A stretch of 64,000 nt of DNA, taken from positions 186,001 to 250,000 of the IMG/VR virus record IMGVR_UViG_3300035698_035366; one strand, written 5' to 3'. The notes under the pieces were generated by a model. The model was not told the origin of the DNA. It made no database searches and was given only the letters and a program-made list of their open reading frames with translations. The position numbers and the translations under genes are program-made. Of this stretch, positions 921 to 50,136 are shown in pieces (position 1 is the stretch's first letter; each line of letters opens with the position of its first letter).

Positions 921-1218
921 TGTAAATGCTTGATGCTAATAATAGCAAATCAGGACCCGGGCTCGTTCCCGGCATCTCCACCAACACTTCGGTGGCATCT
1001 CTTTTTTATGGGGATGAAAGGTTCGACTGGTGCGTGAAAGTTTAGTTTAGTTTACATCGGATTGGTGAGCCGACCACAAAGTAACCCGTTTTAAATGCAA
1101 ACGACAATGCTCCCGTACAGGAAATGCGCCTAGCGGCCTGATCCTGGTAGGGAAATTCCGGAGACGAATGCGATCTTCGGTGGAGTTTGGAGGGCACTCA
1201 TCATCAGGAGCCCTCCGT
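921..1218 (+). ncRNA. ssrA: Circularly permuted (two-piece) tmRNA, tag ANDNAPVQEMRLAA*
   Basis: Acceptor piece ends ...CATCTCC-A-CCA at 983; coding piece starts GGGGATG at 1010 (G3:U70 Ala determinant); resume codon GCA at 1097, stop TGA at 1139-1141; 3' hairpin GGAGGGC...GCCCTCC. Confidence 0.95.
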
Positions 1219-1219
1219 T

Positions 1220-2026
1220 TTATTCCATAATTTCCAATTCAAGTTCCTCTAATAATATAGAAGAATCACTGCTTTTAGAACTATTTTCAGATACTGTTAA
1301 AAATTCGCAATTTTTTATATGTCCTATTATGGATGGGTCGATTTGATTGTTATAACCATAATGTATACTTAATCGATGATCTTTAACAACCCCACCTGGA
1401 TTATTTTTAGGATGAAACCATCCCAATTTAACCAATAAATCATATCCTTTGATTCCCTTTATATTTTCTGGTGTAATATGAAATGAACAAATAGAACGAT
1501 ATGAATGTATATCTTTTTCAGAACTGGATAAAATACGTTGTTGTTCCTCATTTAATGAGGTTATTTCGTGGTCCATAATTAATTGTAATTCTTTAATTAA
1601 TTCAGAGTATTTAGGATTGGTAATTTCTATTCTCTTTTGTATATGCTCCAATTTTCTAAACGTTGAGAAATTCCTTAAAAACATTTTTCGTATAGATTTG
1701 GTCTTGCGTTTTTGATTAAGTTTATAATAAATAGATTTTGGTATTAAATTATAGGCTAACAGCATCCTGTCCGCAAATATATAATTAGCAAACCCTACAT
1801 CCGATTGATCTATATCAATATTAAATAATGATTTTAACATTAATGATAATTCACTATGTGTTATATTAGGTAATTTCTTTTTGATAACGCCACCAAAGGA
1901 CTGATGCAAATCTGCTAACCCGTCAACTACAATTTCGGTATATGGATAATCGTTACTGTCTGAAGATAATGAACTATTAATATAGGCCCGTAGTTTGATA
2001 AATGTTTCTTTGTCGTAATTTTGCAT
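1220..2026 (-). CDS. Putative HNH-family endonuclease
   Basis: C-terminal DH-x-SI...GH..N..L...EN..K motif. Confidence 0.55.
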   Translation of the reverse strand: MQNYDKETFIKLRAYINSSLSSDSNDYPYTEIVVDGLADLHQSFGGVIKKKLPNITHSELSLMLKSLFNIDIDQSDVGFANYIFADRMLLAYNLIPKSIYYKLNQKRKTKSIRKMFLRNFSTFRKLEHIQKRIEITNPKYSELIKELQLIMDHEITSLNEEQQRILSSSEKDIHSYRSICSFHITPENIKGIKGYDLLVKLGWFHPKNNPGGVVKDHRLSIHYGYNNQIDPSIIGHIKNCEFLTVSENSSKSSDSSILLEELELEIME

Positions 2027-2312
2027 ATTGATTTCTCCAGGTTTTAATGTATAAGTAATGGAGTGGGACAGCCCTCCTCCAGGTGGGTTTTGATTGCTTC
2101 AACAATCAATTACCACTACTATTTAGTCCTTTTTTCATGACAACCCCTCCACACCCCTATATAATGCTGCACTGCCACATCTGCGCTAAACGCATGACAG
2201 TGTTGCGAAACTATGGGTTGAAATTGACTCATTTTGCTACTATATTAGTATAAATAATATTGCAGTGCAGCAATGTATTATTTGGAAAGATACCCAAAAA
2301 TATGGAGAAGAA

Positions 2313-2462
2313 ATGATGAAGATTATTAAGATTGTTAAGATGATTATAGATAAAATGGATTATGCACAGAGACGTCATGATTATGATCGTTATTTAGTTA
2401 ACGAATATGGTATGAAACGCCCAGTTACCAAATTCAACATTTATGAATTATATAGATTATAA
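2313..2462 (+). CDS. Small basic protein (DUF1127-like, tentative)
   Basis: GGAG SD before ATG 2313; MMKIIKIVKMIIDK... Confidence 0.5.
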   Translation: MMKIIKIVKMIIDKMDYAQRRHDYDRYLVNEYGMKRPVTKFNIYELYRL

Positions 2463-2473
2463 GGAGAATTATT

Positions 2474-2590
2474 ATGCGTAAATTTTTTAAAATGATTATT
2501 GATACAGTTGCTTGTTCAATGGAAAAATCAGCACAACGAAAGATTGCCCAGTTTAAGAGAGAAGGCCGTATTGGTACTTATCACGTTTAA
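2474..2590 (+). CDS. 38-aa small basic protein
   Basis: AAGGAG SD; MRKFFKMIIDTVACSMEKSAQRKIAQFKREGRIGTYHV. Confidence 0.65.
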   Translation: MRKFFKMIIDTVACSMEKSAQRKIAQFKREGRIGTYHV

Positions 2591-3244: not shown

Positions 3245-3565
3245 ATGAGTTATAATTTATTCCTTGACGACGAGCGATTCCCGCCCGATGATCCCAGAGA
3301 TTGGGTTATTCAACGGAGTTTCGCTACGGCTGTTCATTTCGTTTGCAAGAATGGATTTCCTTCGTTTGTGAGTTTTGATCACGACCTGGGAGATTCTGCC
3401 CCACAAACAGGATATGACTTTGCGAAGTGGCTTGTTGAGCGAGATATTGATTATGGTGACCTACCTGATGATTTTTCGTTCGTAGTACATAGCGCAAATC
3501 CAGTAGGCGCAAAGAACATCCAGATGTATCTTGATAATTATTTAAGAGTTAGGAAAAATGGCTAG
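3245..3565 (+). CDS. Cyclic-phosphate processing receiver-domain protein
   Basis: LFLDDER...SFDHDLG...TGYDFAKWL...VHSANPVG motifs. Confidence 0.8.
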   Translation: MSYNLFLDDERFPPDDPRDWVIQRSFATAVHFVCKNGFPSFVSFDHDLGDSAPQTGYDFAKWLVERDIDYGDLPDDFSFVVHSANPVGAKNIQMYLDNYLRVRKNG

Positions 3566-4013
3566 TCTTAGTGAACTAAACCGGATTGAATACTTTTCCG
3601 AGGATATGGAGAATGGTAATTATACTATCATTGTCCATCAATACATGTTTGGGCAGTTGCGAATTCAATTGACTGATCTTCGCAAGCGTGATCCATATGC
3701 CCCAGAAGGCCACGGTGGTATTGTACGTGAGCTCGATACGTATCATGCTGGAACGGCGTCGGGTGCATGTATGAATCTTAGCGAAGCCGAAGATCCTGAG
3801 CAGTGGTGTATCGAGCAAGAGCGAGACTGGAATTGTGAAATGTCCGCTGATGGACCACTGGCCGGTGATAGGATCCGATTGGACGAAACGCAAGAATCAA
3901 ACCCATATCGCCGTTGTGGAGTTCAAGATTTTACTCCCAATGCATATCCAATCCATTTCCCTGGTGTCCGGCAGCAGACAAAAGGTAAGAAAGAACTAAA
4001 AACGCAGGCATAA
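3558..4013 (+). CDS. Hypothetical protein
   Basis: ORF track, overlaps the upstream stop. Confidence 0.6.
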   Translation: MASLSELNRIEYFSEDMENGNYTIIVHQYMFGQLRIQLTDLRKRDPYAPEGHGGIVRELDTYHAGTASGACMNLSEAEDPEQWCIEQERDWNCEMSADGPLAGDRIRLDETQESNPYRRCGVQDFTPNAYPIHFPGVRQQTKGKKELKTQA

Positions 4014-4038
4014 ATAATAAAAAGAGGGAATTTTTATT

Positions 4039-4299
4039 ATGACACCAAAGCAAATGAGAAAAGAGCTTGACAGCCTCCAAGAAGGCATGTACGACCAAAA
4101 GAAGAAGTCTCGCCCGGCAGCTTTACCTGCAAACCCGGCGACCAACGATGTTTTCATTGATCGCAGTATGGAACACCCCGATAAAATAGCCATCACTCTC
4201 AAGGGCCGAACTGCCCTAGTCGATGCTGATAAAATAACAAAAATAATCGAAAAACTAGAAAATCTGTTAAAGGAAATCGACGATGGAGCAGATCAATAA
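4039..4299 (+). CDS. Hypothetical protein (late-type promoter)
   Basis: ORF track; CATAAATA upstream. Confidence 0.6.
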   Translation: MTPKQMRKELDSLQEGMYDQKKKSRPAALPANPATNDVFIDRSMEHPDKIAITLKGRTALVDADKITKIIEKLENLLKEIDDGADQ

Positions 4300-4472
4300 C
4301 GGAACAATAACGTTTTCGTACTCAAACCAAGACATTGAATTTTCAGGAGTTCTTGAGCAACTACGATTAGAACTCACACCTGATATATACCAACGTATCC
4401 CGGGAGCAGACCCAAAAAATTGTTATGAATAGGGGTTGACAAATTAATTAATAATTTGTATAATATGGTATT

Positions 4473-5132
4473 ATGAATACACCAGAAAAATATCCTAGGA
4501 CTTTACATTGGCCTGAAAGTGAAACTATTCACGCCGATGATAAGACCCACACCGATCCAGAATTTTTTATCGGCAAGCAAGTCGTAATAACAGAGAAACT
4601 AGACGGCGGGAATACCTGTCTCTATAATGGTAAGGCATATGCCCGATCAACCACAATGGAAGCTGGTGATGGGTGGTTTGCGATGGTCAAAAAGCATCAT
4701 GCATGGAAGACTACAAACATTGATCGCTATGCCTATTATGGTGAGGATTTATATGGCATTCATTCTATTGAGTATGATGCACTGGATGAGGGAGAAACGT
4801 TTCGTCTATTCGCTGTTCTCGACAATGAGACTAATATGTTTTTGCCTTGGGAAGAAGTCGTTCAACATGCGGTACAGAATGATTTCCTTACGGTTCCTGT
4901 AATTCACCCAGGTGGAGTATTTTTCAGTGTTCAGGAGATTACGGATTGGTTTAAGGTTGCAATGGAATATGGTTCAGAACTCGGAGATACTACTGAAGGT
5001 TTTGTTCTTCGACTAGCAGATGAAATACCATTTGATAAATTTGGTATTCAAGCATGTAAGTATGTCCGCAGAAATCATGTTCAAACTGATCAGCATTGGA
5101 GGAAAAACTGGAAGGCCTGTAAATTAACATGA
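4473..5132 (+). CDS. ATP-dependent RNA ligase family protein
   Basis: KYPRT.H.P, TEKLDGGN (motif I), YGE, EGFVLR, KYVR; TTGACA-N17-TATAAT promoter upstream. Confidence 0.85.
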   Translation: MNTPEKYPRTLHWPESETIHADDKTHTDPEFFIGKQVVITEKLDGGNTCLYNGKAYARSTTMEAGDGWFAMVKKHHAWKTTNIDRYAYYGEDLYGIHSIEYDALDEGETFRLFAVLDNETNMFLPWEEVVQHAVQNDFLTVPVIHPGGVFFSVQEITDWFKVAMEYGSELGDTTEGFVLRLADEIPFDKFGIQACKYVRRNHVQTDQHWRKNWKACKLT

Positions 5133-5461
5133 TGTTACCTGATACCCGAATTATGTGTAATAAGGCGGAATGTAGAACGTGCGGGGATATTATTGAGAGT
5201 CGTCACCGTCATGATTATGTTACATGTTCTTGTTCTTCAATTTCTATCGATGGTGGGAAAGATTATCTTAAACGTGTAGGAAATGTTATAGTTGATCTTA
5301 TTGATCTATCGGAACATGAAAGATATTTCCGAAAGCCTTATGAATGGTCAGCCCGCGACGAAGATGTCGAAAAATGGATGATTGAAAATGGATTTCCTTT
5401 AGATGGCAACTGGGATATCGAGCATTATACTCTTTATAAATTAACATGGGGAGACTGGTGA
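5129..5461 (+). CDS. Zn-ribbon protein (CxxC...CxC...DGG) with C-terminal YKLTW tail
   Basis: ORF track motifs. Confidence 0.65.
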   Translation: MMLPDTRIMCNKAECRTCGDIIESRHRHDYVTCSCSSISIDGGKDYLKRVGNVIVDLIDLSEHERYFRKPYEWSARDEDVEKWMIENGFPLDGNWDIEHYTLYKLTWGDW

Positions 5462-6033: not shown

Positions 6034-6972
6034 ATGTCAAGCATCGATGGCGGTAAGCCTCCTTACCAAGGTATTAGAACGTTTATGCGTTCAACTTATA
6101 CACAGGATTTAACGGATGTTGATATTGCTGTAATTGGCATTCCTTTAGATTTAGGGACGACTAATCGCCCAGGAACACGGATGGGACCAGCTGATATACG
6201 TGATGTTAGTTTGCGACGTTGTTCCGGTGACAATCCCCGTTATGGGTGTAATCCCGTTAATTATGCAAAGATTGTAGACTATGGTGATCTTAATTTGGTA
6301 CTTGGTGATATTACAAAAAGCGTTGATTTAATTTCTATCCAAATGGAACAAATCTTAAAATCTGGAGTTCATCCGGTTATACTTGGGGGTGACCACACTA
6401 TCACTTATCCAATCCTAAAAGCGTTTTATCAACAAAATCAACAGCCAATGGCCATCGTCCATTTTGATGCTCATCATGATTATTGGTCAGAAAACTATGG
6501 CGCACCAATTGCCCATGGAACATGGCTTTATCATGCAGTACAGGAAGGGTTGGTTGATGTAGAGAATTCTTTCATGCTTGGTATACGTTGCCCTTCGGAA
6601 CCAACCCACGTTGAAAATCTCCGAAACTTGGGGATGACAGTTTGGGATTACGATTTTGTCCATGAGAAAGGAATGGCCGAAATTGCTCGAAGAATAGATT
6701 TCAAATTAAATGACACACCAGTTTATCTTACCTTCGATGTTGATGGACTCGATCCAGCTTATGCTCCAGGAACCGGAACGCCTGAACCGGGAGGATTTAC
6801 TACTCAAGAAGCAATGCTCCTTTTACATGGTTTAAGAAATCTAAACTGGAAAGGTATGGACGTTGTTGAGGTTTCTCCGATGTATGATGTTGGTCAAATA
6901 ACTAGCCTAGCGGCATGTTCAATAGCATGGAACTATATTTCTGGTATAGCACCAAGTATTGGTACCAAATAA
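6034..6972 (+). CDS. speB: Agmatinase (ureohydrolase family)
   Basis: GGDHTIT, DAHHD, TFDVDGLDPAYAPGTGTPEPGG, DVVEVSP motifs. Confidence 0.9.
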   Translation: MSSIDGGKPPYQGIRTFMRSTYTQDLTDVDIAVIGIPLDLGTTNRPGTRMGPADIRDVSLRRCSGDNPRYGCNPVNYAKIVDYGDLNLVLGDITKSVDLISIQMEQILKSGVHPVILGGDHTITYPILKAFYQQNQQPMAIVHFDAHHDYWSENYGAPIAHGTWLYHAVQEGLVDVENSFMLGIRCPSEPTHVENLRNLGMTVWDYDFVHEKGMAEIARRIDFKLNDTPVYLTFDVDGLDPAYAPGTGTPEPGGFTTQEAMLLLHGLRNLNWKGMDVVEVSPMYDVGQITSLAACSIAWNYISGIAPSIGTK

Positions 6973-26485: not shown

Positions 26486-27739
26486 ATGTCAGACTTAGGT
26501 GATAATGCGGCTTCCACGCCACCAGAATGTTCATTCTGTGATAAAAATTCTCTTGAAGTATCAAAAATGATTGCTGCCGCTCAAGAAGGTGTGTATATAT
26601 GCGACGAATGTATTGAATTGTGTATGGAAGTTCTAAAACAAGATAAATCAACTGATATTGAAATTGACGGAGAAATACCAACTCCAGAAGAACTAAAAGA
26701 ATTTCTAGATCAATATGTTATTGGTCAGGATTATGCTAAAAAAGTCATCTCTGTTGCGGTTTATGACCATTATCGCCGTCTTGATAATCCAATTATTGAC
26801 GATGTTGAAATTGAGAAATCAAACATACTGCTTTGTGGTCCAACTGGCTCAGGGAAGACCCATATAGTTAAGACAATTGCTCGTATGCTTGATGTACCAT
26901 ATTATATCGCTGATGCCACTTCATTAACTGAAGCGGGTTATGTTGGGGATGACGTTGAATCTATTCTTTACGGATTGATGCAAGCCGCCGATCAAGACAT
27001 TAACCGTGCCCAGCGCGGAATTGTATTCATCGATGAAATTGATAAAAAAGGAACTAAATCGGGCTCGGCAAATATTACACGTGATGTTTCGGGCGAAGGA
27101 GTACAGCAAGCACTTTTGAAGATGATTGAAGGGACTGTTGCTCGTGTTCCAACAACTGGTGGCAGGAAACATCCACAAGGTGAAGTAGTGGAAATTGATA
27201 CAGCTAACATTTTGTTCGTTGTTTCTGGAGCATTCATTGGTCTTGATAAACTTGTATCTAAACGCATGAATAAAGGATACACATCGCTAGGATTTGCAAA
27301 TAAGAAAGAGCGACCAGACGAAGGCAAATCAATGGGTGAGATTTTAGAAAACATTGAACCAGAAGATTTAATAGAATATGGCTTAATCCCAGAACTTATT
27401 GGTCGTTTGCCAATTGTTTGCGGGCTTGACGAACTGACAGAAGAGCAGCTAGTGCAGATTCTAATTGAACCAAAAAATGCTCTTGTTAAGCAGTTTAAAG
27501 CTATGTTTAGTTTGGAAAAAGTTGAGTTGAAATTTAATGATGATGCGTTGGTTGAAATCGCAAGAATTGCTAAGAACCGTAAGACTGGCGCCCGCGGTTT
27601 GCGAGCCGTGCTCCAAAGGGCATTATTAAGCACGCAATTTCAAATACCTACAGCGGCAAAAGCAAAACCACCACTAAAGAATGTTACAGTAACTTATGAA
27701 GCGGTTACTGGTGAAGAAGAACCCAAATTGGATTATTAA
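26486..27739 (+). CDS. clpX: ATP-dependent Clp protease ATPase ClpX
   Basis: C4 Zn finger, GPTGSGKT, TEAGYVG, IDEIDK, GRKHP, LGF loop, TGARGLR. Confidence 0.97.
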   Translation: MSDLGDNAASTPPECSFCDKNSLEVSKMIAAAQEGVYICDECIELCMEVLKQDKSTDIEIDGEIPTPEELKEFLDQYVIGQDYAKKVISVAVYDHYRRLDNPIIDDVEIEKSNILLCGPTGSGKTHIVKTIARMLDVPYYIADATSLTEAGYVGDDVESILYGLMQAADQDINRAQRGIVFIDEIDKKGTKSGSANITRDVSGEGVQQALLKMIEGTVARVPTTGGRKHPQGEVVEIDTANILFVVSGAFIGLDKLVSKRMNKGYTSLGFANKKERPDEGKSMGEILENIEPEDLIEYGLIPELIGRLPIVCGLDELTEEQLVQILIEPKNALVKQFKAMFSLEKVELKFNDDALVEIARIAKNRKTGARGLRAVLQRALLSTQFQIPTAAKAKPPLKNVTVTYEAVTGEEEPKLDY

Positions 27740-27802: not shown

Positions 27803-28327
27803 ATGAAAACCGATAGCGAAGACAATATTAAAGTCAATGGTGAAATTACCGCAGCTAATGTAAGGCTGCTTGATGTGGAAGGCGAGGCACTTGGTGTGGT
27901 TACTATCAACCAAGCAACAAACCTAGCAAGGAATGCAGGACTTGACTTGGTTGAGATTGTCCCTCATGCTGAGCCCCCTGTTTGCCGCATGATGGATTTT
28001 GTTAAATTCAAGTATGAACGCAAAAAATCCAAACGTGAGCAAAATCGTAAAAATAGGGAAAACCGTACGGTTGTTAAGGAAATTCAATTCCGCCCCAATA
28101 CGGAAATACATGACATTAATAACAAAACTCGTCAAGCAATTGGTTTTTTGGAGAAGGGAAACCACGTGCGTTTCGTTGTCAAGTTTCGTGGGCGCGAACT
28201 TTCCTATACCGAGAAGGGTGATGAACTTCTAAATCAAGTTCTTTCTACTCTTGGTGATGTGACTGTTGATCAAGAACCAAAAATGATTGGTCGAAATATG
28301 GTCTTGACGGTTTCACCTGCCAAGTAA
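27803..28327 (+). CDS. infC: Translation initiation factor IF-3
   Basis: LDLVEI.P...PPVCR, KEIQFRP, FRGRE. Confidence 0.95.
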   Translation: MKTDSEDNIKVNGEITAANVRLLDVEGEALGVVTINQATNLARNAGLDLVEIVPHAEPPVCRMMDFVKFKYERKKSKREQNRKNRENRTVVKEIQFRPNTEIHDINNKTRQAIGFLEKGNHVRFVVKFRGRELSYTEKGDELLNQVLSTLGDVTVDQEPKMIGRNMVLTVSPAK

Positions 28328-29613: not shown

Positions 29614-29862
29614 ATGGGTAAAAACAACCATTCAGGTGAGTGGGAAGGCCTTCGCGGCTTAAAGGTTAATGTCCGCGATAATAACATTGATCAAGCAATC
29701 CGTAGGTTGAAGAAGATGGTCATCCAAGAAGGATTAATCCGCGAGCTCAAAGAGCGTGAATTTTTTACACGGCCCGGTGAGAAACGGCGACTGAAGAATC
29801 AGGAAGCCCGTCGCAGGACCCAACGTAACACCCGTAAACAAAACGAAGAATGGGATATTTGA
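29614..29862 (+). CDS. rpsU: Ribosomal protein bS21
   Basis: VRDNNIDQAIRRLKK...EGLIRELKEREFF.RP.EKR. Confidence 0.92.
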   Translation: MGKNNHSGEWEGLRGLKVNVRDNNIDQAIRRLKKMVIQEGLIRELKEREFFTRPGEKRRLKNQEARRRTQRNTRKQNEEWDI

Positions 29863-30855: not shown

Positions 30856-31308
30856 ATGAATATTCGAACAACAAACCTCCACGAAATCATGAACAGAGCA
30901 ACCCCACACCTAGTTGGTTTTGATAGTCTCATCCGTTTACTTGAAGATACTGGAACAGCTTTGAATGGTGGTGCGTATCCTCCATACAACATAGTACAAG
31001 ATTCCGAACATGCTTACCGTATTGAACTCGCGGTTGCTGGATTCAAGGAAGAGGAAATCAACATTACTGTTGAAAACCGCAAGCTTTTAATTGTTGGCCG
31101 CAAAGACGATTCCGAAGAGCGTAATTATCTACACCGCGGTATCTCCACTAGAGCATTTGAACGTTCCTTCGTTCTAGCGCAAGACGTAGAAATACGTGAT
31201 GCGAGTCTAGTTGACGGCATGCTTTTGATTGAGCTCGAACATATCGTACCCGAGGCATTACAGCCAAAGAAGATTGATATACGAGTTGCTTCTAAATCAA
31301 AGAAGTAA
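30856..31308 (+). CDS. Small heat-shock protein (IbpA/Hsp20)
   Basis: YPPYNI, IELAVAGF, YLHRGIS.RAF.RSF, DGML.I.L. Confidence 0.95.
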   Translation: MNIRTTNLHEIMNRATPHLVGFDSLIRLLEDTGTALNGGAYPPYNIVQDSEHAYRIELAVAGFKEEEINITVENRKLLIVGRKDDSEERNYLHRGISTRAFERSFVLAQDVEIRDASLVDGMLLIELEHIVPEALQPKKIDIRVASKSKK

Positions 31309-33500: not shown

Positions 33501-33815
33501 ATGAGTGACGTAGAAGTAGTTGCCGATGTAGACATTATGACAAAGGTAAAGACTAAATCAAAACCGCCATCAATGTACAAGGTAATTTTCCATAATGACG
33601 ATTTTACCCCAATGGATTTTGTGATTAAAGTATTGATGACTATCTTTAGTAAGGATTTAGAAGAAGCTAATGCATTAATGCTCCGAATCCATGTGAAGGG
33701 AAAAGGCATCGCCGGCGTGTATAGTAAAGAAATTGCCGAAACAATGAAGAAAGAAACAATTGATGCCGCCCGCCTAAATGGCTATCCATTGAGAGTAACC
33801 ACTGAAGAAGATTAA
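33501..33815 (+). CDS. clpS: N-end-rule adaptor ClpS
   Basis: YKVIFHNDDFTPMDFV..VL...MLRIH..G.GIAGVY..EIAE...YPL. Confidence 0.95.
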   Translation: MSDVEVVADVDIMTKVKTKSKPPSMYKVIFHNDDFTPMDFVIKVLMTIFSKDLEEANALMLRIHVKGKGIAGVYSKEIAETMKKETIDAARLNGYPLRVTTEED

Positions 33816-37390: not shown

Positions 37391-37957
37391 ATGTCAAAAG
37401 CAACTGTGGCGGAAAGTTATACATTACCTGAGTTATCTCAGCATGGGGTCCATTTTCTGAATGAAGGAATAACTGACAAATCTTGCGGTCAAGCAATAAA
37501 TTATATTCTGCGTGCCAACATGGATCCAAGTTGTCCGTGGAAACATATCCAGTTAATTATTAATTCTGGGGGCGGATATGTTGATTCTGGTTTTGCTTTG
37601 ATTGATGTTATGGAAACAAGTAAAATACCAGTTAGAACTCTTGGGCTTGGTACCATTGCTTCAATGGGGTTATTAATTTGCATGGCAGGTGATAAAGGCA
37701 ACAGAGCAGTAACGCCAAAAACAATGATAATGAGCCACCAATTTGCCGGTGGTGCATTCGGTAAACAACACGAACTTGTTTCATCAGCGATACATCATGA
37801 TTGGGTAGGTGATACAATTTTAAAACATTATAAAAAGCATACTGGGTTAACTGAAAAAGTAATCAAAGAAAAATTGCTTCCTGAATCTGATACATGGTTG
37901 ACCGCAACCCAGGCAAAAAAATATAAATTAATAGACAGAATTGCCAATTCATATTAA
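37391..37957 (+). CDS. clpP: ClpP protease subunit
   Basis: INSGGG.V..G, IASMG (Ser), MSHQ (His), DTWL.A.QA..Y.LID. Confidence 0.9.
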   Translation: MSKATVAESYTLPELSQHGVHFLNEGITDKSCGQAINYILRANMDPSCPWKHIQLIINSGGGYVDSGFALIDVMETSKIPVRTLGLGTIASMGLLICMAGDKGNRAVTPKTMIMSHQFAGGAFGKQHELVSSAIHHDWVGDTILKHYKKHTGLTEKVIKEKLLPESDTWLTATQAKKYKLIDRIANSY

Positions 37958-41964: not shown

Positions 41965-41974
41965 GGAATACAGA

Positions 41975-44900: not shown

Positions 44901-47467
44901 CGACCCTAAATAACGACGAAAATTGGGCTTCTAACCAGAACGTATTCGTTACTGTTAATGCTGATTCTGGTACAACTACTGCGGATACAATAACAGATAC
45001 ATTTATTATTTCCGGTGGTTCAGGCATTAGTACATCTATTTCAGGTGACACACTAACAATTACAAATACAGTTAGTCATTTATTGAATAAACTTGATGGT
45101 ATCGTACCTCCTACAGTAAATGATGACAGCGGTGATGGATATGAAGTTGGTAGCTTTTGGGTTGATACTGTAGCAGATGAAGCATATAGACTAGTAGATG
45201 ATACGGTTGGTGCAGCCGTATGGATTAATACCACACTAGAAACATCAGAGCTTGCAACTGTTGCGGTTTCAGGAGATCACTTAGATCTAATCAATATTGG
45301 AACAAATAGCCACGCACAAATTGATAGCCATATTGCTAATGTGACTACAAATCCGCATAATGTAACAGCGATACAGGTTGGAGCCGCCGCAACTGCATCT
45401 AATGTTGGTGTAGGCGGTGTTGGTGTATTCAAACAGAAAACAGGTACTGATTTAGAATTTAGAAACGTAAATGCTGGATCCAACAAGGTAACGATTTCAC
45501 TTGACGCAGGAAATAACGAAATTGATGTTGATATTGATCCTTCCAACATTCTAACTTCAACCCTTAATAATGACAGCAATTGGGCCGCAGATCAAAATCT
45601 ATGGTTGACAGTCGTTGGTGATTCAGGTTCAAGTGCAGCAAATGCAACAACTGATACGCTAAACATTGTTGGTGGTTCAGGAATTTCAACTGCAATGTCC
45701 GGTGATACGTTGACTATTTCAAACAGTTCAGCTAATGCTGATCAGGATATATGGTTAACAATAGCCAGTGATTCGGGATCAACCGCAGCTAATACAACGA
45801 CTGATACTTTAACCATAGCAGGCGGCACCGGAATTAGTACCGCTGTTTCAGGTGATACATTAACTATTACTAATGATTCACCAAACGATGACCAGAATAT
45901 TTGGCTAACTGTTGTTGGTGATTCAGGAGCAACGTCTGCTGATACAACGACTGATACTTTAAATGTTGTTGGTGGTTCAGGAATTTCAACTTCAGTATCT
46001 GGTGATACATTAACCATTAATGCAACCGGTATGTCAGGAACTGAAATGCCAACAGCACAGTTAACAAAAACTGGAAGTGTATATGTTACAAGTACGTCAC
46101 ACACAGATGTTGTTTTTGATACAATTGATGTAGAAAATGATGACACTGTTCTTGATATTGATCCAGATTTAACACACATTGATGTTTTGGAAGATGGTTT
46201 ATATTTCATTGGGTATTCAATGGATGTTGATTCGGGATCTAATGCAACCACACTTTCTGTCCATCTTAGAGATGTTGGTATAACTCCTATTGTTGACATT
46301 CCGGGAACCGTTCGAACCTATGCTGACGCAGAACACGGAATACTTGCTGCCAGCTCATTCGTTTACCTTGATGCAGGAAGTCGGCTCGAGATTGAAGCAA
46401 AAAGAATTGGATCCAATACGCCCACCATAGTTAATCCAACCATGTATGCTATGAAGGTTGAAGGTGCTAAGGGTGATCAAGGTCCTGCAGGGTCTGGATC
46501 AAGTATTCTTGTTAAAGATGAAGGCACGAATGTTGTAAATACCCCACATGATGCATTAAACTTTGTTGGTCCCAGCGTTACAGTCACAGACGGTGGTAGT
46601 GGAGTTGCAACGGTTACGATTTCTGCAACCCCAGACCAGGACTTATTTAAAACGGTAGCTACCGATTCTGGTAGCTCGGTTGCAGATAATTCAACTGATA
46701 CCTTGACTCTCAATGGCGGATCAGGAATTTCAACATCAGCTTCTGGTGATACAATTACGATAACAAACGATTCGCCGAATATTGTCCAAGATGTATTTAA
46801 GACCGTATCTAGTGACTCGGGTAGCTCGGTTGCAGATAATTCAACTGATACTTTGACAATTACGGGTGGATCAGGAATTTCAACATCAGCTTCCGGTGAT
46901 ACAATTACCATCTCTAATACATCTCCAAATATTGTTCAAGATGTATTTAAGACAATTGTTGTAAGTGGGCAATCTAATGTTGTAGCAGAAAGTTCCGCTG
47001 ATACCCTAACATTGGTTGCTGGAACTAATATGACTATTACTACTGATGCTGGATCAGATACTGTTACGTTTGCAGCATCAGGCGGCGCCGCATATGGCGC
47101 GGGATTTGAAGAATCGTCAAGTGATTCGGAATCAAGCACTACATCATCATATAAACAAACGAAACTAAGCCATACAACCGCATCGTTAACAAGTGGACAT
47201 AAATATAGAATTGGATATTCGTTTGAATGTAAAAACTCCAGTGATAGTGGCAAAGTTCTAGTTGATGTGGAAATTGATGGTACTGATATAGGCAATACCT
47301 ATTATCAACCAGGCGAGGATTGCTCAAATAACTATATTATGCAATCAGGTTTTTACTATTCCGATAGTTTGTCTGGTGCAGAAACTATTACAATAAAATT
47401 TAGTAACAGTGGTTATGGAACAGCGTATATTAAGAAAGCTAGAATAGAAATTTGGAGAGTCTCATAA
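41975..47467 (+). CDS. 1830-aa repeat-rich tail-fibre-like virion protein
   Basis: 5 copies of NTASN.G.GG.GVF...LQFKNINAGSNKV... and many DSGST.A...TDTL...GG repeats. Confidence 0.8.
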   Translation: MADANALRKIIILKNVSVSDITVAGALIPAGQQGDFSEVPISDLFDDPFLEPAIASGDIIVNDGTGDLSADGGDIHIRRDSQHTRWVTPWTDEDGQIYDDPLPTEHLVLISTGTNTNPVWDWPRLRIRDDGVIVPGLTGPGTPMDMLDFTGSGVTVTHLGGGIAGIDIAGPGLVIQEEGGTVTGGPHDTLNFVGASVTVTDGTGGVATITLDAENNTASNIGVGGVGVFDGKVGVDLQFKNINAGSSKVSITDDSGNNEIDIDVDPSNILTSTLNNDENWADDQNLWLTVAGDSGSTAANTTTDTLTIAGGTNISTLMAGDTLIINTTAMPDQNLFSHIVADSGSTTADVTTDTLNIVGGTNVTTTIVGDTLTIDATGGGSGEVNTASNIGVGGFGVFDGKVGVDLQFKNINTGSNKVSITDDVGNNEIDIDIVPGNILTSTLNNNANWAANQNLFETVTADSGSTTANVTTDTLNIVGGTNVTTTIVGDTLTIDATGGGAGESNTASNVGAGGVGVFDGKVGLDLQFKNINAGSNKVTITDDAGNNEIDIDVDPSNILTSTLNNDENWAANQNIWLTIAGDSGSSAANTITDTLTVSGGTGIDTLVSGDTLTITNSNPNVDQNIFLNVTDGSNTAVADSTTDTLTIAGGSGIDVLVNPGTDTVTISYSGVIGDLDQNLFETVSSDSGSTTANTITDTITIAGGTGIDTSVLGDTLTITANANVPANQNLFETIALSGNTTGDTSVVADTTTDTLNIVGGTGVTLTGNATTDTITISTDGQPDQNLFETITGDSGSTTANVTNDTLTIAGGTGIDTVVSGDTLTITANNAVPANQNIWLNVAGDSGSTAANTTTDTLTVSGGTLVTTSVSGDTLTIDASVALNDISDVDLTGLSNNDILIYNLSSGNWEVGTLPAPGETNTASNIGVGGVGVFDGKVGVDLQFKNINAGSNKVTVTDDAGNNEIDIDVDPSNILTSTLNNDENWASNQNVFVTVNADSGTTTADTITDTFIISGGSGISTSISGDTLTITNTVSHLLNKLDGIVPPTVNDDSGDGYEVGSFWVDTVADEAYRLVDDTVGAAVWINTTLETSELATVAVSGDHLDLINIGTNSHAQIDSHIANVTTNPHNVTAIQVGAAATASNVGVGGVGVFKQKTGTDLEFRNVNAGSNKVTISLDAGNNEIDVDIDPSNILTSTLNNDSNWAADQNLWLTVVGDSGSSAANATTDTLNIVGGSGISTAMSGDTLTISNSSANADQDIWLTIASDSGSTAANTTTDTLTIAGGTGISTAVSGDTLTITNDSPNDDQNIWLTVVGDSGATSADTTTDTLNVVGGSGISTSVSGDTLTINATGMSGTEMPTAQLTKTGSVYVTSTSHTDVVFDTIDVENDDTVLDIDPDLTHIDVLEDGLYFIGYSMDVDSGSNATTLSVHLRDVGITPIVDIPGTVRTYADAEHGILAASSFVYLDAGSRLEIEAKRIGSNTPTIVNPTMYAMKVEGAKGDQGPAGSGSSILVKDEGTNVVNTPHDALNFVGPSVTVTDGGSGVATVTISATPDQDLFKTVATDSGSSVADNSTDTLTLNGGSGISTSASGDTITITNDSPNIVQDVFKTVSSDSGSSVADNSTDTLTITGGSGISTSASGDTITISNTSPNIVQDVFKTIVVSGQSNVVAESSADTLTLVAGTNMTITTDAGSDTVTFAASGGAAYGAGFEESSSDSESSTTSSYKQTKLSHTTASLTSGHKYRIGYSFECKNSSDSGKVLVDVEIDGTDIGNTYYQPGEDCSNNYIMQSGFYYSDSLSGAETITIKFSNSGYGTAYIKKARIEIWRVS

Positions 47468-47488
47468 TATTATTGAGGATTATTAAAA

Positions 47489-48421
47489 ATGGCATTATAT
47501 AACAAAAATAAAACTGGTTCAATTAAGACAAATCAGCTTCAAGTAGAAATTAACAATGATCTAACTATTGTTCCTTCTTGTACTTCTATATCAAGCAATG
47601 GGGATGATTTAATTATTGAATTTGCTGATACTTTGACGGGTGCAGAGGAAACTCAGCTTGATACATTGGTTGAAAACCATGTACCAACCGCCGATTTGGT
47701 AAATGCTGCTATGTTCCCTATATCAGATATTGATGGAATTAAATTAGCGGTTCATTCTTCCCCGAAACCTGATGTTCCCGGTGTAAAATCTATTGCAGTT
47801 TGGACTGGTGCTGGAGATGATCCAATAACTGGCTCTATTGGAGGAGGTGAATTATTGGGTTTTGAGTGTACTCCAGGAACAGCACTGGTTGAAATTGATG
47901 TTAAGTTTTCACCAGTAAACGGACGAATATGGATTCATGAAGGTTATTTGAAATTTGATAATGGTGGCGTTGGTGACTATATGGATTCATTGGTTATTTG
48001 CAATCCGACGCCATTGCAAACATCAGTTAATTTGGATTTAGTTATTGACGGAGATTGGATTAAATATTCACTTAGTGGTCCAGGAACCGGAACTCATGGC
48101 TTCGCCGATCCTACTTTAATTTCATTGGTGCCAAGACCCTTTTTAAAAGATGGTGATTGGGATTATGATGGGACAAATCTTACCCCTAATTTCGCAGGGG
48201 ACGGAAATTCTAAAATTTCAGCTGTAGAGAAAGTTGTTAGCAAATTTCTAAATAAAATTCCTGTTAAGGGGACTTCATCGTTTTTCACAATGACTTCCGA
48301 TGAAACTACTGAATTGCCTGCAAATTTCTTCCTTAGAATTCGTGCTCATAATGTATCAAATACGACATGGTCAGCAACGGCTATTATGGAAATTTATAGA
48401 GAAAAAACAGTCGACGATTAA
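47489..48421 (+). CDS. Virion-associated hypothetical protein
   Basis: ORF track; follows the fibre gene. Confidence 0.65.
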   Translation: MALYNKNKTGSIKTNQLQVEINNDLTIVPSCTSISSNGDDLIIEFADTLTGAEETQLDTLVENHVPTADLVNAAMFPISDIDGIKLAVHSSPKPDVPGVKSIAVWTGAGDDPITGSIGGGELLGFECTPGTALVEIDVKFSPVNGRIWIHEGYLKFDNGGVGDYMDSLVICNPTPLQTSVNLDLVIDGDWIKYSLSGPGTGTHGFADPTLISLVPRPFLKDGDWDYDGTNLTPNFAGDGNSKISAVEKVVSKFLNKIPVKGTSSFFTMTSDETTELPANFFLRIRAHNVSNTTWSATAIMEIYREKTVDD

Positions 48422-48498
48422 AATTATTAAGAATATTGATATTCCTTCTATTATTTGTTATATTAAATTATAATATCATAATAAAAGGGTTATAATTT

Positions 48499-49431
48499 AT
48501 GGATAATCAATGCAGGACTACGGAAGAATTATATGATGAATGTAATCGGATCGTTAAGGAATCTGAACATGTATCAATCACACCATCCAAATATGTAAAT
48601 TTTGATCATGCGTTTGTGGAGAACCCAGAGCCAGTTTCAATGGTGTGGTACCTAAGTGAAGATACAGATGATCACCAACAGGCGTTTGGTGAATTTATAG
48701 TTTCTTCCGCCTTTAATGGTGGTTACTGGTATGATACAGATCCCGTAACACAATGGGAAGTAAATGGTTCCGGTAGCATGGCTATGGAAAAATGGATACG
48801 TGAGGAATTATTCAATAACGGCCTTCATCCATATCATTGCCAAGACCGTCAAAAAGTTATAAAGAAGCTTTATCCAAGTCTTGATTTGCAGCCAAATGCA
48901 GCACATCGAAAAAGAATTATATCTGAACTTGCGTTTAATAACCGTCGATTTGCAGAACCCATTATGCGTCAAAGACACACAAATCGAGAAGAATACACTT
49001 TCAATTGGCTCGATGTTTCATTTTTAGCAGATTGCTTACCTGAATCATTTGGTGGAGATCCGTATTTGAAAAAGGCTTGTTTAGTATATCTCATATTTAC
49101 GGGTTGGCTTCGATCAAAGGGTATTAAAGTTACTGCTGATTTCCCAATCCCAACCGATTATCAAATGCCACGAATTTTCCAATATGAAGGAGCAATTGAT
49201 ATTACAGTAGCTTTTGAAAACGAATTGAATGCCGGGAAGCTTGTTGATGTAACATCACCAGAAGTAATGGCTTTTAGAGCAGCGGGAATTGTTGTCGCAC
49301 ATGAACTTGCTGAACGTTATGGTCTCGATGATTACCAGATTGATAATGTACTGTTTAGTCTGTATCGCAAAGACGAAAACTTCATAAAAAACTCTGTAAA
49401 ACCAATGCGTTGCATGAGCATGTGGTTCTAA
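48499..49431 (+). CDS. Queuosine-salvage (Qng1/DUF2419)-like glycosylase
   Basis: DPYLKKA.L, P.DYQMPR...GAI, E...RAA, IDN.L pattern. Confidence 0.55.
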   Translation: MDNQCRTTEELYDECNRIVKESEHVSITPSKYVNFDHAFVENPEPVSMVWYLSEDTDDHQQAFGEFIVSSAFNGGYWYDTDPVTQWEVNGSGSMAMEKWIREELFNNGLHPYHCQDRQKVIKKLYPSLDLQPNAAHRKRIISELAFNNRRFAEPIMRQRHTNREEYTFNWLDVSFLADCLPESFGGDPYLKKACLVYLIFTGWLRSKGIKVTADFPIPTDYQMPRIFQYEGAIDITVAFENELNAGKLVDVTSPEVMAFRAAGIVVAHELAERYGLDDYQIDNVLFSLYRKDENFIKNSVKPMRCMSMWF

Positions 49432-49689
49432 CATGCATATTGACACCCTAATACAAGAATATGTTGTAATTCGCGATAAAATGCGAAAAGCGCAGGAAAT
49501 TGAGCAGGATTTGCGTTCCAAATGGTTTAATGAAGATGATTATCTAACAAACAAAGCCATTATGAAAATACGCAAGTCATGGTTGAGCCAACTTGATATT
49601 GTTAGTAATTTGTCTCAAAAAGCTAACAAGGCCAAGCGTTTGATTACTGAAGAGCTTGACAATCTCCCCAGTTCATAGTATAATAAGCT

Positions 49690-50136
49690 ATGACAAACAT
49701 TACAACAAACCGCCGCGCGAAATTTGACTACGAACTGGAACAATCCTACGAAGCGGGGATTGAGCTCGTTGGTTCAGAAGTTAAGACTCTTCGAACTCGT
49801 GGAGCCAGCATTGTCGAATCATATGTAGAGGTCAAAGACGACGAATGTTGGTTAATTAATGCTAACATTGAACCATATGAACCAGCTAGGATTAATCATG
49901 AGCCAAAGCGTCGCCGGAAGCTTTTGTTGCACCGGCGTGAAATCGACCAGATGACAGTGAAAGTTCAACAGCGTGGATATACTATTGTCCCAGTAAAAAT
50001 GTATTTTAATTCCAGAGGCCGAGTGAAGATTGAAATTGCTATCGGCAAGGGGAAGCATACATATGATAAGAAAAGGGCTATTCGTGATCGTATAGTTGAT
50101 CGAGAAACCCAACGAGAGATGAAGAATTTAGGTTAA
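49690..50136 (+). CDS. smpB: SsrA-binding protein SmpB
   Basis: NRRAKFDY, EAGIELVGSEVK, RKLLLHRREI, KGK..YDKK. Confidence 0.97.
   Translation: MTNITTNRRAKFDYELEQSYEAGIELVGSEVKTLRTRGASIVESYVEVKDDECWLINANIEPYEPARINHEPKRRRKLLLHRREIDQMTVKVQQRGYTIVPVKMYFNSRGRVKIEIAIGKGKHTYDKKRAIRDRIVDRETQREMKNLG

What the first reader, a model, noticed from the sequence alone, without database searches (positions are those of the whole stretch)
921..50136. Phage encodes a self-contained trans-translation and degradation pathway
Seen: tmRNA (tag ending LAA), SmpB, ClpX, ClpP, ClpS, Smr nuclease, Pth2, IF3, bS21 and Hsp20 in one 50-kb span. Established: tmRNA-SmpB tags stalled products, ClpXP recognises C-terminal LAA, and SmrB cleaves mRNA at collided ribosomes. 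Inference: the phage replaces host ribosome rescue end to end, possibly to counter tRNA/mRNA-cleaving defences or to retarget proteolysis.
Basis: partly seen in the sequence, partly recalled or inferred. Interest (0 to 1): 0.65.

Follow-up and report, generated by a model that had tools for sequence, protein, structure and literature searches.

The report
Jumbo phage ribosome-rescue and Clp genes
A T4-like jumbo phage of an alphaproteobacterium really does carry its own tmRNA, SmpB, ClpX, Clp protease subunits and other translation helpers. These are scattered, still need host factors, and are a richer example of something already reported in huge phages, not a sealed new pathway.

Summary
The window is bases 186001-250000 of a 296-kb virus record with a T4-type capsid gene. 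It is syntenic with the cultured jumbo phages Phosso and Atu_ph07.

**Confirmed and intact:**
- a two-piece alpha-type tmRNA (868-1219) with tag ANDNAPVQEMRLAA
- SmpB, ClpX, IF3 and bS21, all above NCBIfam equivalog cut-offs
- ClpS, Hsp20 and an Smr-domain protein, at Pfam level

**Corrections:**
- The in-window "ClpP" is a divergent paralogue (catalytic triad kept, far below ClpP cut-offs). The canonical ClpP lies 176 kb upstream, outside the window.
- Pth2 is interrupted by two in-frame TAG codons.
- The Smr protein cannot be equated with SmrB.
- ClpS is a ClpA adaptor, and no ClpA gene was found.
- No AlaRS, EF-Tu or SspB gene was found, so the system is not self-contained.
- The tag looks like host tags, so nothing suggests retargeting.

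**Known background:**
- ClpX-IF3, bS21, sHsp, ClpS and Smr are lineage-typical.
- Phosso has a tmRNA but no SmpB.
- Lak megaphage already has tmRNA, SmpB, ClpX and ClpP together.
- Huge-phage tmRNA and SmpB were reported in 2020.

Verdict: a new member of a known kind, of moderate interest.

The parts
868..1219 (+). Two-piece (permuted) alpha-type tmRNA gene. Promoter-like TTGACT-N17-TATAAAT at 886-915. Acceptor piece about 921-983, ending CATCTCC-A-CCA (CCA at 981-983). Intervening segment 984-1009. Coding piece from G1010 (GGGGATG; G1012 pairs with T977, giving G3.U70). Tag frame 1097-1141 reads ANDNAPVQEMRLAA then stop. Terminal hairpin 1190-1217 followed by a T run.
   Evidence: RF01849 76.3 bits and RF04321 79.8 bits. 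Sequence read; tag extracted; promoter pattern. ARAGORN does not call it.
3245..5132 (+). RNA-repair context next to the tmRNA: cREC_REC (cyclic-phosphate processing receiver) at 3245-3565 and RNA ligase at 4473-5132.
   Evidence: Pfam PF20274 87 bits and PF09414 72 bits. Conserved in the 88% relative.
10846..11382 (+). P-loop kinase of the AAA_33 / polynucleotide-kinase type, upstream of Pth2.
   Evidence: Pfam PF13671 84.5 bits.
12131..12598 (+). Pth2-like peptidyl-tRNA hydrolase frame, interrupted by in-frame TAG codons at 12200-12202 and 12341-12343.
   Evidence: PF01981 59 bits with a stop inside. Translation and stop positions. 43% and 40% identical to intact orthologues in Atu_ph07 and Phosso. 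Identical in three assemblies. The relative keeps TAG#1 and has TGG at the TAG#2 position.
17442..17891 (+). Smr-domain protein with DLHG and TGRG motifs. Generic Smr, not demonstrably SmrB.
   Evidence: Pfam PF01713 36.2 bits, model positions 1-39 of 77. NCBIfam gives only SmrA at 22 bits against a 180-bit cut-off. Best PDB match is the N4BP2 Smr domain, E 0.45. Orthologue annotated in Phosso.
26486..27739 (+). ClpX unfoldase: C4 zinc finger, Walker A/B, GYVG pore loop, RKH loop, and LGF in place of the IGF ClpP-docking loop.
   Evidence: NCBIfam NF003745 561 bits against 359. Pfam. Alignment to an E. coli ClpX structure.
27803..28327 (+). Translation initiation factor IF3 (N and C domains), directly downstream of clpX as in Phosso and Atu_ph07.
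   Evidence: TIGR00168 181 bits against 60. Synteny.
29614..29862 (+). Ribosomal protein bS21 with a 16-residue N-terminal extension.
   Evidence: TIGR00030 70 bits against 29. Pfam 68 bits.
30856..31308 (+). Small heat-shock protein (Hsp20, IbpA-like).
   Evidence: Pfam PF00011 66.8 bits. IbpA model 127 bits against 212.
33501..33815 (+). ClpS adaptor. The ORF is open from 33435, but the likely start is Met at 33501, because a TTGACA-N-TATAAATA promoter-like site occupies 33435-33465. The NDD and His pocket motifs are present.
   Evidence: Pfam PF02617 105.5 bits. NCBIfam 106 bits against 112-143. Promoter pattern. The relative's ClpS is 102 aa.
37391..37957 (+). Divergent ClpP-family protease. 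Ser/His/Asp triad aligned; N-terminal axial region not conserved. Belongs to a subfamily seen only on metagenomic, huge-phage-like contigs.
   Evidence: Pfam 118 bits. NCBIfam 111 bits against 249. Alignments. Homologues and their contexts.
49690..50136 (+). SmpB, full length with a basic C-terminal tail.
   Evidence: Pfam 185 bits. NF003843 189 bits against 130. Alignment A1. Absent from Phosso and Atu_ph07.

Best explanation
**What it is**
The window is part of a T4-like jumbo phage of the Atu_ph07/Phosso lineage. The genome is at least 296 kb, and contigs of up to 408 kb carry the same genes. The host is most likely an alphaproteobacterium.

Like other huge phages, it has gathered cell-derived genes for translation and protein quality control. 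The part specific to this phage is a complete trans-translation core:
- a two-piece alpha-type tmRNA with its own sigma-70-like promoter, a G3.U70 acceptor stem, an encoded CCA and a host-like tag, ANDNAPVQEMRLAA
- a full-length SmpB.

**How it most likely works (inferred)**
1. Host enzymes process the tmRNA and host AlaRS charges it.
2. Host EF-Tu delivers it, with phage SmpB, to ribosomes stalled on broken or non-stop mRNAs. Such mRNAs are abundant during infection.
3. This frees ribosomes for phage protein synthesis.
4. The LAA-tagged fragments are unfolded by ClpX (phage and/or host) and degraded in ClpP. The phage's canonical ClpP lies outside the window. The in-window ClpP-like paralogue may form mixed rings with it.
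5. ClpS would act on host ClpA.

**What is not part of this pathway**
IF3, bS21, sHsp, the Smr protein and the Pth2 paralogues are parallel helpers for translation and stress. They are not steps of one pathway. The system supplements the host machinery and depends on it; it does not replace it.
For: **Component identities**

**Phage identity**
- Gp23 capsid gene, 255 bits.
- Tail protein phrog_677, 499 bits.
- Synteny Smr-QueD-topoisomerase II-ClpX-IF3-bS21-sHsp-ClpS with Phosso, and topoisomerase-ClpX-IF3 with Atu_ph07.

**Conservation in a relative**
The whole set is conserved in order on a 48-kb contig of a relative whose SmpB is 88% identical.

**Alphaproteobacterial origin of the tmRNA**
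- It matches the alpha model.
- Tags of eight alphaproteobacteria read ANDN...(L/V/I/Q)AA.
- The Phosso tmRNA tag is ANDNVSTKVALAA.

**Recurrence of the four-part set in unrelated huge phages**
- Lak-B1 has tmRNA, SmpB, ClpX and ClpP.
- LR756504 has tmRNA, SmpB and ClpP.
- Phage G has tmRNA, ClpX and ClpP.

**Dependence on the host**
No AlaRS, EF-Tu-sized GTPase, SspB or ClpA was found.

**Literature**
- Huge-phage tmRNA and SmpB: PMC7162821.
- Two-piece tmRNAs in marine myophages: PMC9004378.
- clpX next to IF3 and topoisomerase, and several Clp ORFs, in phage AP-J-162: PMC11242549.
Against: - There are no expression or processing data.
- The genes are dispersed over 50 kb or more, and the canonical ClpP is 176 kb away. 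Genomic arrangement gives no evidence that they work together.
- The phage tmRNA scores far below cellular alpha tmRNAs (76 bits against 209-315). Its activity is therefore not assured.
- In a quick tree, phage SmpB sits on a long branch outside the alphaproteobacterial clade. This differs from the tmRNA's alphaproteobacterial affinity.
- The close relative Phosso has a tmRNA but no SmpB, and Atu_ph07 has neither. The pair is therefore dispensable in this lineage.
- The record is only about 79% complete, so absences are provisional.
Confidence: 0.6

Rival explanations
1. The genes are independent auxiliary genes that merely co-reside in a very large genome. Under this reading, tmRNA and SmpB only recycle ribosomes. 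Phage ClpXP has its own clients, such as replication or regulatory proteins, as with lambda O or the Mu repressor, or host proteins. ClpS, sHsp, IF3 and bS21 act separately. There is no phage-specific link from tagging to degradation.
For: - The layout is dispersed: tmRNA at 0.9 kb, ClpX at 26 kb, SmpB at 50 kb, canonical ClpP at -176 kb.
- ClpX-IF3-topoisomerase synteny exists in relatives that lack tmRNA and/or SmpB.
- The AP-J-162 paper proposes a role for ClpX in replication (PMC11242549).
- The divergent ClpP subfamily occurs on other huge-phage contigs without SmpB or ClpX nearby.
Against: - An LAA-ended tag is by family knowledge a ClpX degron, so some coupling is hard to avoid once both are expressed in one cell.
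- The same four components recur together in the unrelated Lak megaphage.
Confidence: 0.3
2. The set is primarily a counter-defence module. Host anticodon nucleases, mRNA interferases or abortive-infection RNases create stalled ribosomes and damaged tRNAs. The phage answers with RNA repair (kinase, ligase, cREC), its own tRNAs, tmRNA-SmpB rescue, Smr cleavage and Pth2.
For: - The tmRNA lies 2-4 kb from cREC_REC and RNA ligase. An AAA_33 kinase sits next to Pth2.
- There are 34 tRNA genes in the record.
- Other anti-defence genes lie in the same block: a Tad6 Thoeris inhibitor and a Macro domain.
Against: - This is purely contextual. No defence system or target has been identified.
- Pth2 in this block is interrupted.
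- The Smr protein has no demonstrated link to SmrB.
- The same genes would equally serve general maintenance of translation.
Confidence: 0.25
3. The phage tmRNA is a decoy or regulator, not a working rescue RNA. It might titrate host SmpB or sense stalled ribosomes to time lysis.
For: - The tmRNA is divergent and low-scoring (76 bits).
- A phage element consisting only of the tRNA-like domain of tmRNA is known in mycobacteriophage DS6A (PMC4131195).
- Al-Shayeb et al. mention a sensing role (PMC7162821).
Against: - This tmRNA keeps the tRNA-like domain, G3.U70, CCA, the resume-codon context and a complete host-like tag frame.
- The phage also brings its own full-length SmpB. That is the opposite of titrating SmpB away.
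Confidence: 0.07
4. The contig is cellular or chimeric (a provirus with host flanks), and the rescue genes belong to the host.
For: IMG/VR labels the record 'provirus'.
Against: - Every gene in question is flanked by phage genes and is syntenic with two cultured lytic jumbo phages.
- The same arrangement appears in independent assemblies and in a relative with 88% identical SmpB.
- Capsid and tail genes are present.
- G+C content is uniformly 33-46% across the window.
- SmpB and the tmRNA are far diverged from any cellular copy: 55% identity, and 76 bits against more than 200.
Confidence: 0.02

Closest known systems
[quoted passage not shown]
   Same: - Shared gene order Smr-QueD-topoisomerase II-ClpX-IF3-...-bS21-...-sHsp-...-ClpS.
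- A canonical ClpP plus, in Phosso, a second divergent ClpP.
- Several Pth2 paralogues.
- Dozens of tRNA genes.
- Phosso and AP-J-162 carry a tmRNA. Phosso's is two-piece with tag ANDNVSTKVALAA.
(PMC11242549)
   Different: - Neither Phosso nor Atu_ph07 encodes SmpB, and Atu_ph07 has no tmRNA.
- Protein identities are only about 40-56%.
- This phage's tmRNA has a 26-nt intervening segment, against about 390 nt in Phosso.
- Its Pth2 orthologue carries amber codons.
Lak megaphages of Prevotella and the huge phages of Al-Shayeb et al. 2020 (for example LR756504)
   Same: - tmRNA, SmpB and ClpP are encoded in one phage genome, and Lak-B1 also has ClpX.
- tmRNA and SmpB in huge phages were explicitly reported, along with IF3 and bS21 (PMC7162821).
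   Different: - These are unrelated phage lineages on Bacteroidota or other hosts.
- Their tmRNAs are one-piece.
- No ClpS was found in Lak-B1.
- No published statement was found linking the tag to a phage ClpXP.
Bacterial trans-translation with ClpXP degradation (tmRNA-SmpB, SspB, ClpXP, ClpAP-ClpS), as in Caulobacter and E. coli
   Same: - Two-piece tmRNA architecture and the ANDN...LAA tag.
- SmpB with its C-terminal tail.
- ClpX with zinc finger, RKH, GYVG and an IGF-type loop.
- ClpP catalytic triad.
- ClpS pocket motifs.
   Different: - No SspB, ClpA, AlaRS or EF-Tu is encoded.
- The tmRNA is highly diverged: 76 bits against 209-315 for cellular copies.
- SmpB falls outside the alphaproteobacterial clade.
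- The genes are scattered in a virus genome.
Two-piece tmRNAs of marine T4-like myophages (Melnitz, pelagimyophages)
   Same: A permuted alpha-type ssrA sits behind an early-type promoter in a T4-like phage (PMC9004378).
   Different: - Those phages are about 140-kb myophages, and no phage SmpB or ClpXP is described for them.
- Melnitz ssrA carries a glutamine riboswitch. No riboswitch was detected here.

Membership tests
Two-piece (permuted) alphaproteobacterial tmRNA | Covariance-model score above the Rfam gathering threshold. | tested here: met
   RF01849 76.3 bits against 50; RF04321 79.8 bits against 47.
Two-piece (permuted) alphaproteobacterial tmRNA | Acceptor (3') piece encoded upstream of the coding (5') piece; acceptor stem with G3.U70; encoded CCA. 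| tested here: met
   Alignment and sequence. GGGGATG (1010-1016) pairs with CATCTCC (973-979), with G1012.T977. ACCA lies at 980-983.
Two-piece (permuted) alphaproteobacterial tmRNA | Tag reading frame with a GCA resume codon, ending in a hydrophobic-Ala-Ala degron and a stop. | tested here: met
   Positions 1097-1141 read ANDNAPVQEMRLAA then stop. Eight cellular alpha tags read ANDN...xAA.
Two-piece (permuted) alphaproteobacterial tmRNA | Transcribed, cleaved into two pieces and charged with alanine. | not testable with these tools
Only a promoter-like site and a terminal hairpin are seen.
SmpB | Equivalog-level profile score, full length, basic C-terminal tail. | tested here: met
   NF003843 189 bits against 130; TIGR00086 173 against 119. 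Alignment A1 shows the invariant residues and the tail ...GKGKHTYDKKRAIRDR....
ClpX | Equivalog score; C4 zinc finger; Walker A/B; GYVG and RKH pore loops; IGF-type ClpP-docking loop. | tested here: met
   NF003745 561 bits against 359. PF06689 53 bits. Alignment to E. coli ClpX shows GPTGSGKT, FIDEIDK, GYVG, RKH, and LGF at the IGF position.
ClpP (the in-window gene, 37391-37957) | Equivalog or subfamily profile score for ClpP. | tested here: not met
   NF001368 111 bits against 249; TIGR00493 90 against 309. Only the broad Pfam family is passed, at 118 bits.
ClpP (the in-window gene, 37391-37957) | Ser-His-Asp catalytic triad. | tested here: met
   Aligned to ASMG, HQ and the Asp of solved ClpPs and of the phage's canonical ClpP.
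ClpP (the in-window gene, 37391-37957) | Binds ClpX. | tested here: inconclusive
   The complex prediction gave no verdict. The N-terminal axial region is not alignable.
ClpP (canonical copy, G000:C1:10193-10732, outside the window) | Equivalog or subfamily profile score. | tested here: met
   NF001368 335 bits against 249; TIGR00493 321 against 309.
ClpS | Family profile and N-degron pocket motifs. | tested here: met
   PF02617 105.5 bits against 23. The HNDDFTP and IHxxG motifs were read from the sequence. NCBIfam equivalog cut-offs are narrowly missed: 106 against 112-143.
ClpS | A ClpA/ClpC partner encoded alongside. | tested here: not met
   tblastn with ClpX finds no other Clp/Hsp100 ATPase in the 296 kb. 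The record is about 79% complete.
SmrB (ribosome-collision endonuclease) | Match to an SmrB model; ribosome-binding N-terminal element. | tested here: not met
   Only the generic Smr domain is found: PF01713 36 bits over half the model. NCBIfam gives SmrA at 22 bits against 180 and no SmrB hit. No solved SmrB match. The N-terminal element was not tested.
Pth2 peptidyl-tRNA hydrolase | Domain profile match in an uninterrupted reading frame. | tested here: not met
   PF01981 59 bits against 23, but with TAG at 12200 and 12341. Orthologues in Phosso and Atu_ph07 are intact.
IF3 / bS21 | Equivalog profile scores. | tested here: met
   TIGR00168 181 bits against 60; TIGR00030 70 against 29.
   No AlaRS. 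The only GTP_EFTU hit is a 723-aa frame, which is EF-G-sized. No SspB. No ClpA.

The most novel reading that the evidence does not exclude
The phage runs an integrated ribosome-rescue circuit that it controls itself.
- Early sigma-70-type promoters drive the tmRNA and ClpS.
- Phage SmpB-tmRNA tags products of ribosomes stalled by RNA-cleaving host defences.
- ClpS shuts host ClpAP off from tagged substrates.
- A phage-only ClpX-ClpP/ClpP-like hetero-complex clears those substrates.
- Pth2 is gated by read-through of a conserved in-frame amber codon. It would then be made only when termination or decoding is perturbed.
Probability: 0.12. Interest if true: 0.7.

Novelty: new member of a known kind. 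Interest (0 to 1): 0.38.

Why it matters
This phage gives a concrete, nearly complete set of parts for asking whether huge phages run trans-translation themselves: tmRNA, SmpB, ClpX and two ClpPs.

Its cultured relatives form a natural series for experiments:
- Phosso has a tmRNA but no SmpB.
- Atu_ph07 has neither.

Two practical points also follow:
- ARAGORN-based surveys miss divergent two-piece phage tmRNAs.
- A Pfam 'ClpP' hit in a phage need not be the partner of ClpX.

The biology itself, translation and proteostasis genes in huge phages, is already established.

Tried and rejected
- **Sequencing runs.** No read-level check of expression, tmRNA processing or the TAG variants was possible, and I did not try another route.
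- **Complex prediction.** Complex prediction on ClpX plus two copies of the ClpP-like protein gave no verdict (score 0.20 against a mark of 0.34). This is not evidence either way.
- **tmRNA against the phage collection.** blastn found no match.
- **Alternative genetic code.** Reading through TAG, TGA or TAA raises coding density only trivially. TAG ends 29 of 279 long ORFs, and no CTA-anticodon tRNA is among the 34 tRNAs. Genome-wide recoding is rejected.
- **Origin of SmpB.** A quick tree places the phage pair on a long branch outside a well-supported alphaproteobacterial clade. The careful search did not finish, and the cellular sample was biased by the alpha-rich query patterns. The nearest unnamed proteins had no names. 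The origin is left open.
- **tmRNA in the 88% relative.** Its contig ends about 700 bp short of where the tmRNA would lie, so this is unknown.
- **Sample identifiers.** A paper search returned nothing, so the environment is not established.

Full report
**What the sequence is**

The window is G000:C1:186001-250000 of a 296,119-bp IMG/VR virus record. CheckV estimates it at 79% complete, and it is labelled 'provirus'.

The record is a phage:
- It has a T4-type major capsid gene (PF07068, 255 bits).
- The window holds an 1830-aa baseplate/tail-fibre connector protein (phrog_677, 499 bits).
- The window also holds endonuclease VII and both subunits of a T4-type topoisomerase II.
- The record has 34 tRNA genes.
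- The gene order Smr - QueD - topoisomerase II - ClpX - IF3 - ... - bS21 - ... - sHsp - ... - ClpS matches the cultured 469-kb Sinorhizobium phage Phosso.
- The order topoisomerase - ClpX - IF3 matches the 490-kb Agrobacterium phage Atu_ph07.

The same phage has been assembled independently. Proteins identical to its SmpB occur on contigs of 250, 363 and up to 408 kb. A relative whose SmpB is 88% identical keeps the whole block in order on a 48-kb contig. The 'cellular or chimeric' refutation therefore fails. The 'provirus' label is probably an artefact of the many cell-like genes; that last point is inference.

**Checking the ten listed components**

*tmRNA.* Rfam places alpha_tmRNA at 868-1219 (76.3 bits; gathering 50) and tmRNA_permuted at 921-1141 (79.8 bits; gathering 47). 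Reading the sequence gives these features:
- a near-consensus TTGACT-N17-TATAAAT site at 886-915
- an acceptor piece ending CATCTCC-A-CCA at 973-983
- a 26-nt intervening segment
- a coding piece starting GGGGATG at 1010, which gives the G3.U70 alanine identity pair
- the tag frame GCA...TGA at 1097-1141, reading ANDNAPVQEMRLAA
- a terminal hairpin followed by a T run at 1190-1225.

ARAGORN misses the gene.

*Proteins above NCBIfam equivalog cut-offs.*
- SmpB: 189 against 130.
- ClpX: 561 against 359.
- IF3: 181 against 60.
- bS21: 70 against 29.

ClpX keeps the zinc finger, Walker A/B, GYVG and RKH. It has LGF at the position of the IGF docking loop. SmpB keeps the invariant residues and the basic C-terminal tail.

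*Proteins passing Pfam only.* ClpS and Hsp20 pass Pfam but fall just short, or well short, of the equivalog cut-offs.

*Smr.* The Smr protein matches only the N-terminal half of the Pfam Smr model (36 bits). It has the DLHG and TGRG motifs. It gives no SmrB match.

**Two corrections to the list**

*First correction: ClpP.* The 'ClpP' at 37391-37957 is a divergent paralogue.
- It scores 111 bits against a cut-off of 249.
- It is 33% identical to a canonical ClpP.
- Its triad is aligned, but its N-terminal axial region is not conserved.
- Its about 28 homologues are all metagenomic, and some lie on other huge-phage-like contigs without SmpB or ClpX nearby.

The genome's true ClpP orthologue is at G000:C1:10193-10732 (335 bits against 249). 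That is 176 kb upstream of the window. Phosso, Lak-B1 and LR756504 show the same pairing of a canonical and a divergent ClpP.

*Second correction: Pth2.* Pth2 (12131-12598; PF01981 59 bits) has in-frame TAG codons at 12200 and 12341.
- It is the orthologue of intact genes in Atu_ph07 (43% identity) and Phosso (40% identity).
- The region is identical, including both TAG codons, in three assemblies.
- In the 88% relative, TAG#1 is conserved just before the domain starts, although the leader differs by a 45-nt indel.
- At the TAG#2 position the relative has TGG (Trp). Phosso has Gln and Atu_ph07 has Asn.
- There is no sign of genome-wide recoding and no suppressor tRNA.

As it stands the gene is broken, or it depends on amber read-through. 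A second, weaker Pth2-like frame lies intact elsewhere in the record.

**Is the system self-contained?**

No. The 296-kb record shows:
- no AlaRS
- no EF-Tu; the only GTP_EFTU hit is a 723-aa frame, which is EF-G-sized
- no SspB
- no other Clp/Hsp100 ATPase.

By family knowledge, ClpS is the adaptor of ClpA/ClpC, and it inhibits ClpAP action on ssrA-tagged proteins. Here it can only act on a host ATPase. IF3, bS21 and Hsp20 belong to initiation and chaperoning, not to rescue. The genes are scattered among unrelated genes, so this is not an operon.

**Is proteolysis retargeted?**

Nothing suggests it. Tags from eight alphaproteobacterial genomes read ANDN...(L/V/I/Q)AA, for example ANDNFAEEVRLAA and ANDNFAPVAQAA. 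The phage tag has the same head and the same LAA end. Host and phage ClpX should both recognise it; that is inference.

**Origins**

The tmRNA is of the alpha type but is highly diverged: 76 bits against 209-315 for cellular copies.

SmpB is at most 55% identical to any cellular protein. The best named hits are Sphingomonadales. In a quick tree, SmpB sits with its 88% relative on a long branch outside a well-supported alphaproteobacterial clade. That tree has caveats: the sampling was biased and the careful search did not finish.

Phosso has a two-piece tmRNA (108 bits, with an intervening segment of about 390 nt and tag ANDNVSTKVALAA) but no SmpB. Atu_ph07 has neither. SmpB is thus the lineage-specific addition here.

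**Comparison with what is known**

- Al-Shayeb et al. 2020 reported tmRNAs, SmpB, IF3 and bS21 in huge phages (PMC7162821).
- Phage tmRNAs were catalogued in 2014 (PMC4131195).
- Two-piece tmRNAs are described in marine myophages, and about 2.3% of phage genomes carry a tmRNA (PMC9004378).
- The AP-J-162 paper notes clpX beside IF3 and topoisomerase, six Clp ORFs, Hsp20 and a tmRNA (PMC11242549).
- Phage G has a tmRNA and ClpXP (PMC12484599).

| Genome | tmRNA | SmpB | ClpX | ClpP | ClpS |
|---|---|---|---|---|---|
| This record | yes | yes | yes | two copies | yes |
| Lak-B1 | yes | yes | yes | yes | no |
| LR756504 | yes | yes | no ClpX zinc-finger hit | yes | not searched |
| Phage G | yes | no | yes | yes | no |

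These presences and absences come from my own searches. The four-part core therefore recurs in unrelated huge phages. The present phage is the fullest example within its own lineage. It is a new member of a known kind.

**Most likely mechanism**

The component identities are shown. The steps below are inferred.
1. An early host-type promoter drives the tmRNA.
2. Host enzymes process the tmRNA and charge it with alanine.
3. Phage SmpB and host EF-Tu deliver it to ribosomes stalled on truncated mRNAs.
4. The released LAA-tagged fragments are degraded by ClpX-ClpP, phage and/or host.

The neighbouring RNA-repair genes make a counter-defence purpose plausible but unproven. These are cREC_REC, RNA ligase and an AAA_33 kinase. 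The same block also holds anti-defence genes, a Tad6 Thoeris inhibitor and a Macro domain.

**Limits**

- No expression or read data could be obtained.
- The ClpX/ClpP-like complex prediction gave no verdict.
- Absences rest on a record that is about 79% complete.

Noticed in passing
window 12053-12598; relative L113:9508-9999: The Pth2 gene has a conserved promoter-like site and ribosome-binding site, then an ATG mini-frame, then an in-frame TAG immediately before the conserved domain. This holds in both this phage and its 88% relative, although the leaders differ by a 45-nt indel. Neither phage has ATG, GTG or TTG between that TAG and the family-conserved internal Met. This phage has a second TAG where the relative has TGG. 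Possible readings are amber read-through gating or a pseudogene.
   Followed up: partly
L110 (JGI 3300022885) and L111 (SRR7528797), contig ends: Two independent contigs of this phage end about 126 bp after the gene upstream of Pth2, at the 5' edge of the Pth2 region. This hints at strain heterogeneity or an assembly break there.
   Followed up: no
window 35734-36465 and 28800-29243: A Tad6 homologue (type I Thoeris inhibitor; PF25188, 77.5 bits) and a Macro-domain protein (PF01661, with a weak ThsA_Macro match) lie between the Clp genes. They are likely anti-defence genes, and both are conserved in the relative.
   Followed up: no
window 3245-5461 and 10846-11382: An RNA-repair-type set is present: cREC_REC (cyclic-phosphate processing receiver), RNA ligase, DUF7695 (three tandem copies in the relative) and an AAA_33 polynucleotide-kinase-like P-loop kinase.
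   Followed up: partly
window 868-1219: ARAGORN does not report this tmRNA, but Rfam models do. Surveys of phage tmRNAs that rely on ARAGORN probably undercount divergent two-piece forms.
   Followed up: partly
window 38366-48421: A roughly 10-kb block of fibre or baseplate-like genes lies between the ClpP-like gene and SmpB. It includes the 1830-aa repetitive phrog_677 protein. The block is absent from the 88% relative, where the ClpP-like gene and SmpB are only 2.6 kb apart. It may be a swapped host-range cassette.
   Followed up: partly
window 886-916, 33435-33465, 12060-12096: TTGAC(A/T)-N-TATAAAT(A) promoter-like sites sit directly upstream of the tmRNA, ClpS and Pth2. The strict pattern gives 3 matches against 0.74 expected. 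The site at 33435 implies that ClpS starts at 33501.
   Followed up: partly
L006 (Phosso, PV764938, 349553-350242): The two-piece tmRNA of Phosso has an intervening segment of about 390 nt between the acceptor and coding pieces, against 26 nt here. The content of that segment was not examined.
   Followed up: no
G000:C1:88719-89582 (-) and G000:C1:81447-82324: Outside the window there is a 723-aa frame with a GTP_EFTU domain, which is EF-G-sized. There is also a cluster of short Gp23-like fragments 2-3 kb downstream of the intact capsid gene.
   Followed up: no
window 58882-63858: A dense array of 15 tRNA genes lies here (34 in the record). Several are unusually long (82-86 nt), and G+C content is higher (about 46%) than in the rest of the window.
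   Followed up: no
window 6034-6972, 51399-52340, 31414-32166: Other cell-like genes are present: an arginase/agmatinase-family enzyme (293 bits), a PAS-domain protein, and a weak MotA/ExbB-like membrane protein.
   Followed up: no
whole record G000 compared with JGI contig Ga0222664_1000004: The IMG/VR 'provirus' record corresponds to about bases 2857-298975 of a 362,903-bp JGI contig. About 64 kb was therefore trimmed as 'host'. Given the lytic jumbo-phage relatives, this is probably over-trimming.
   Followed up: no
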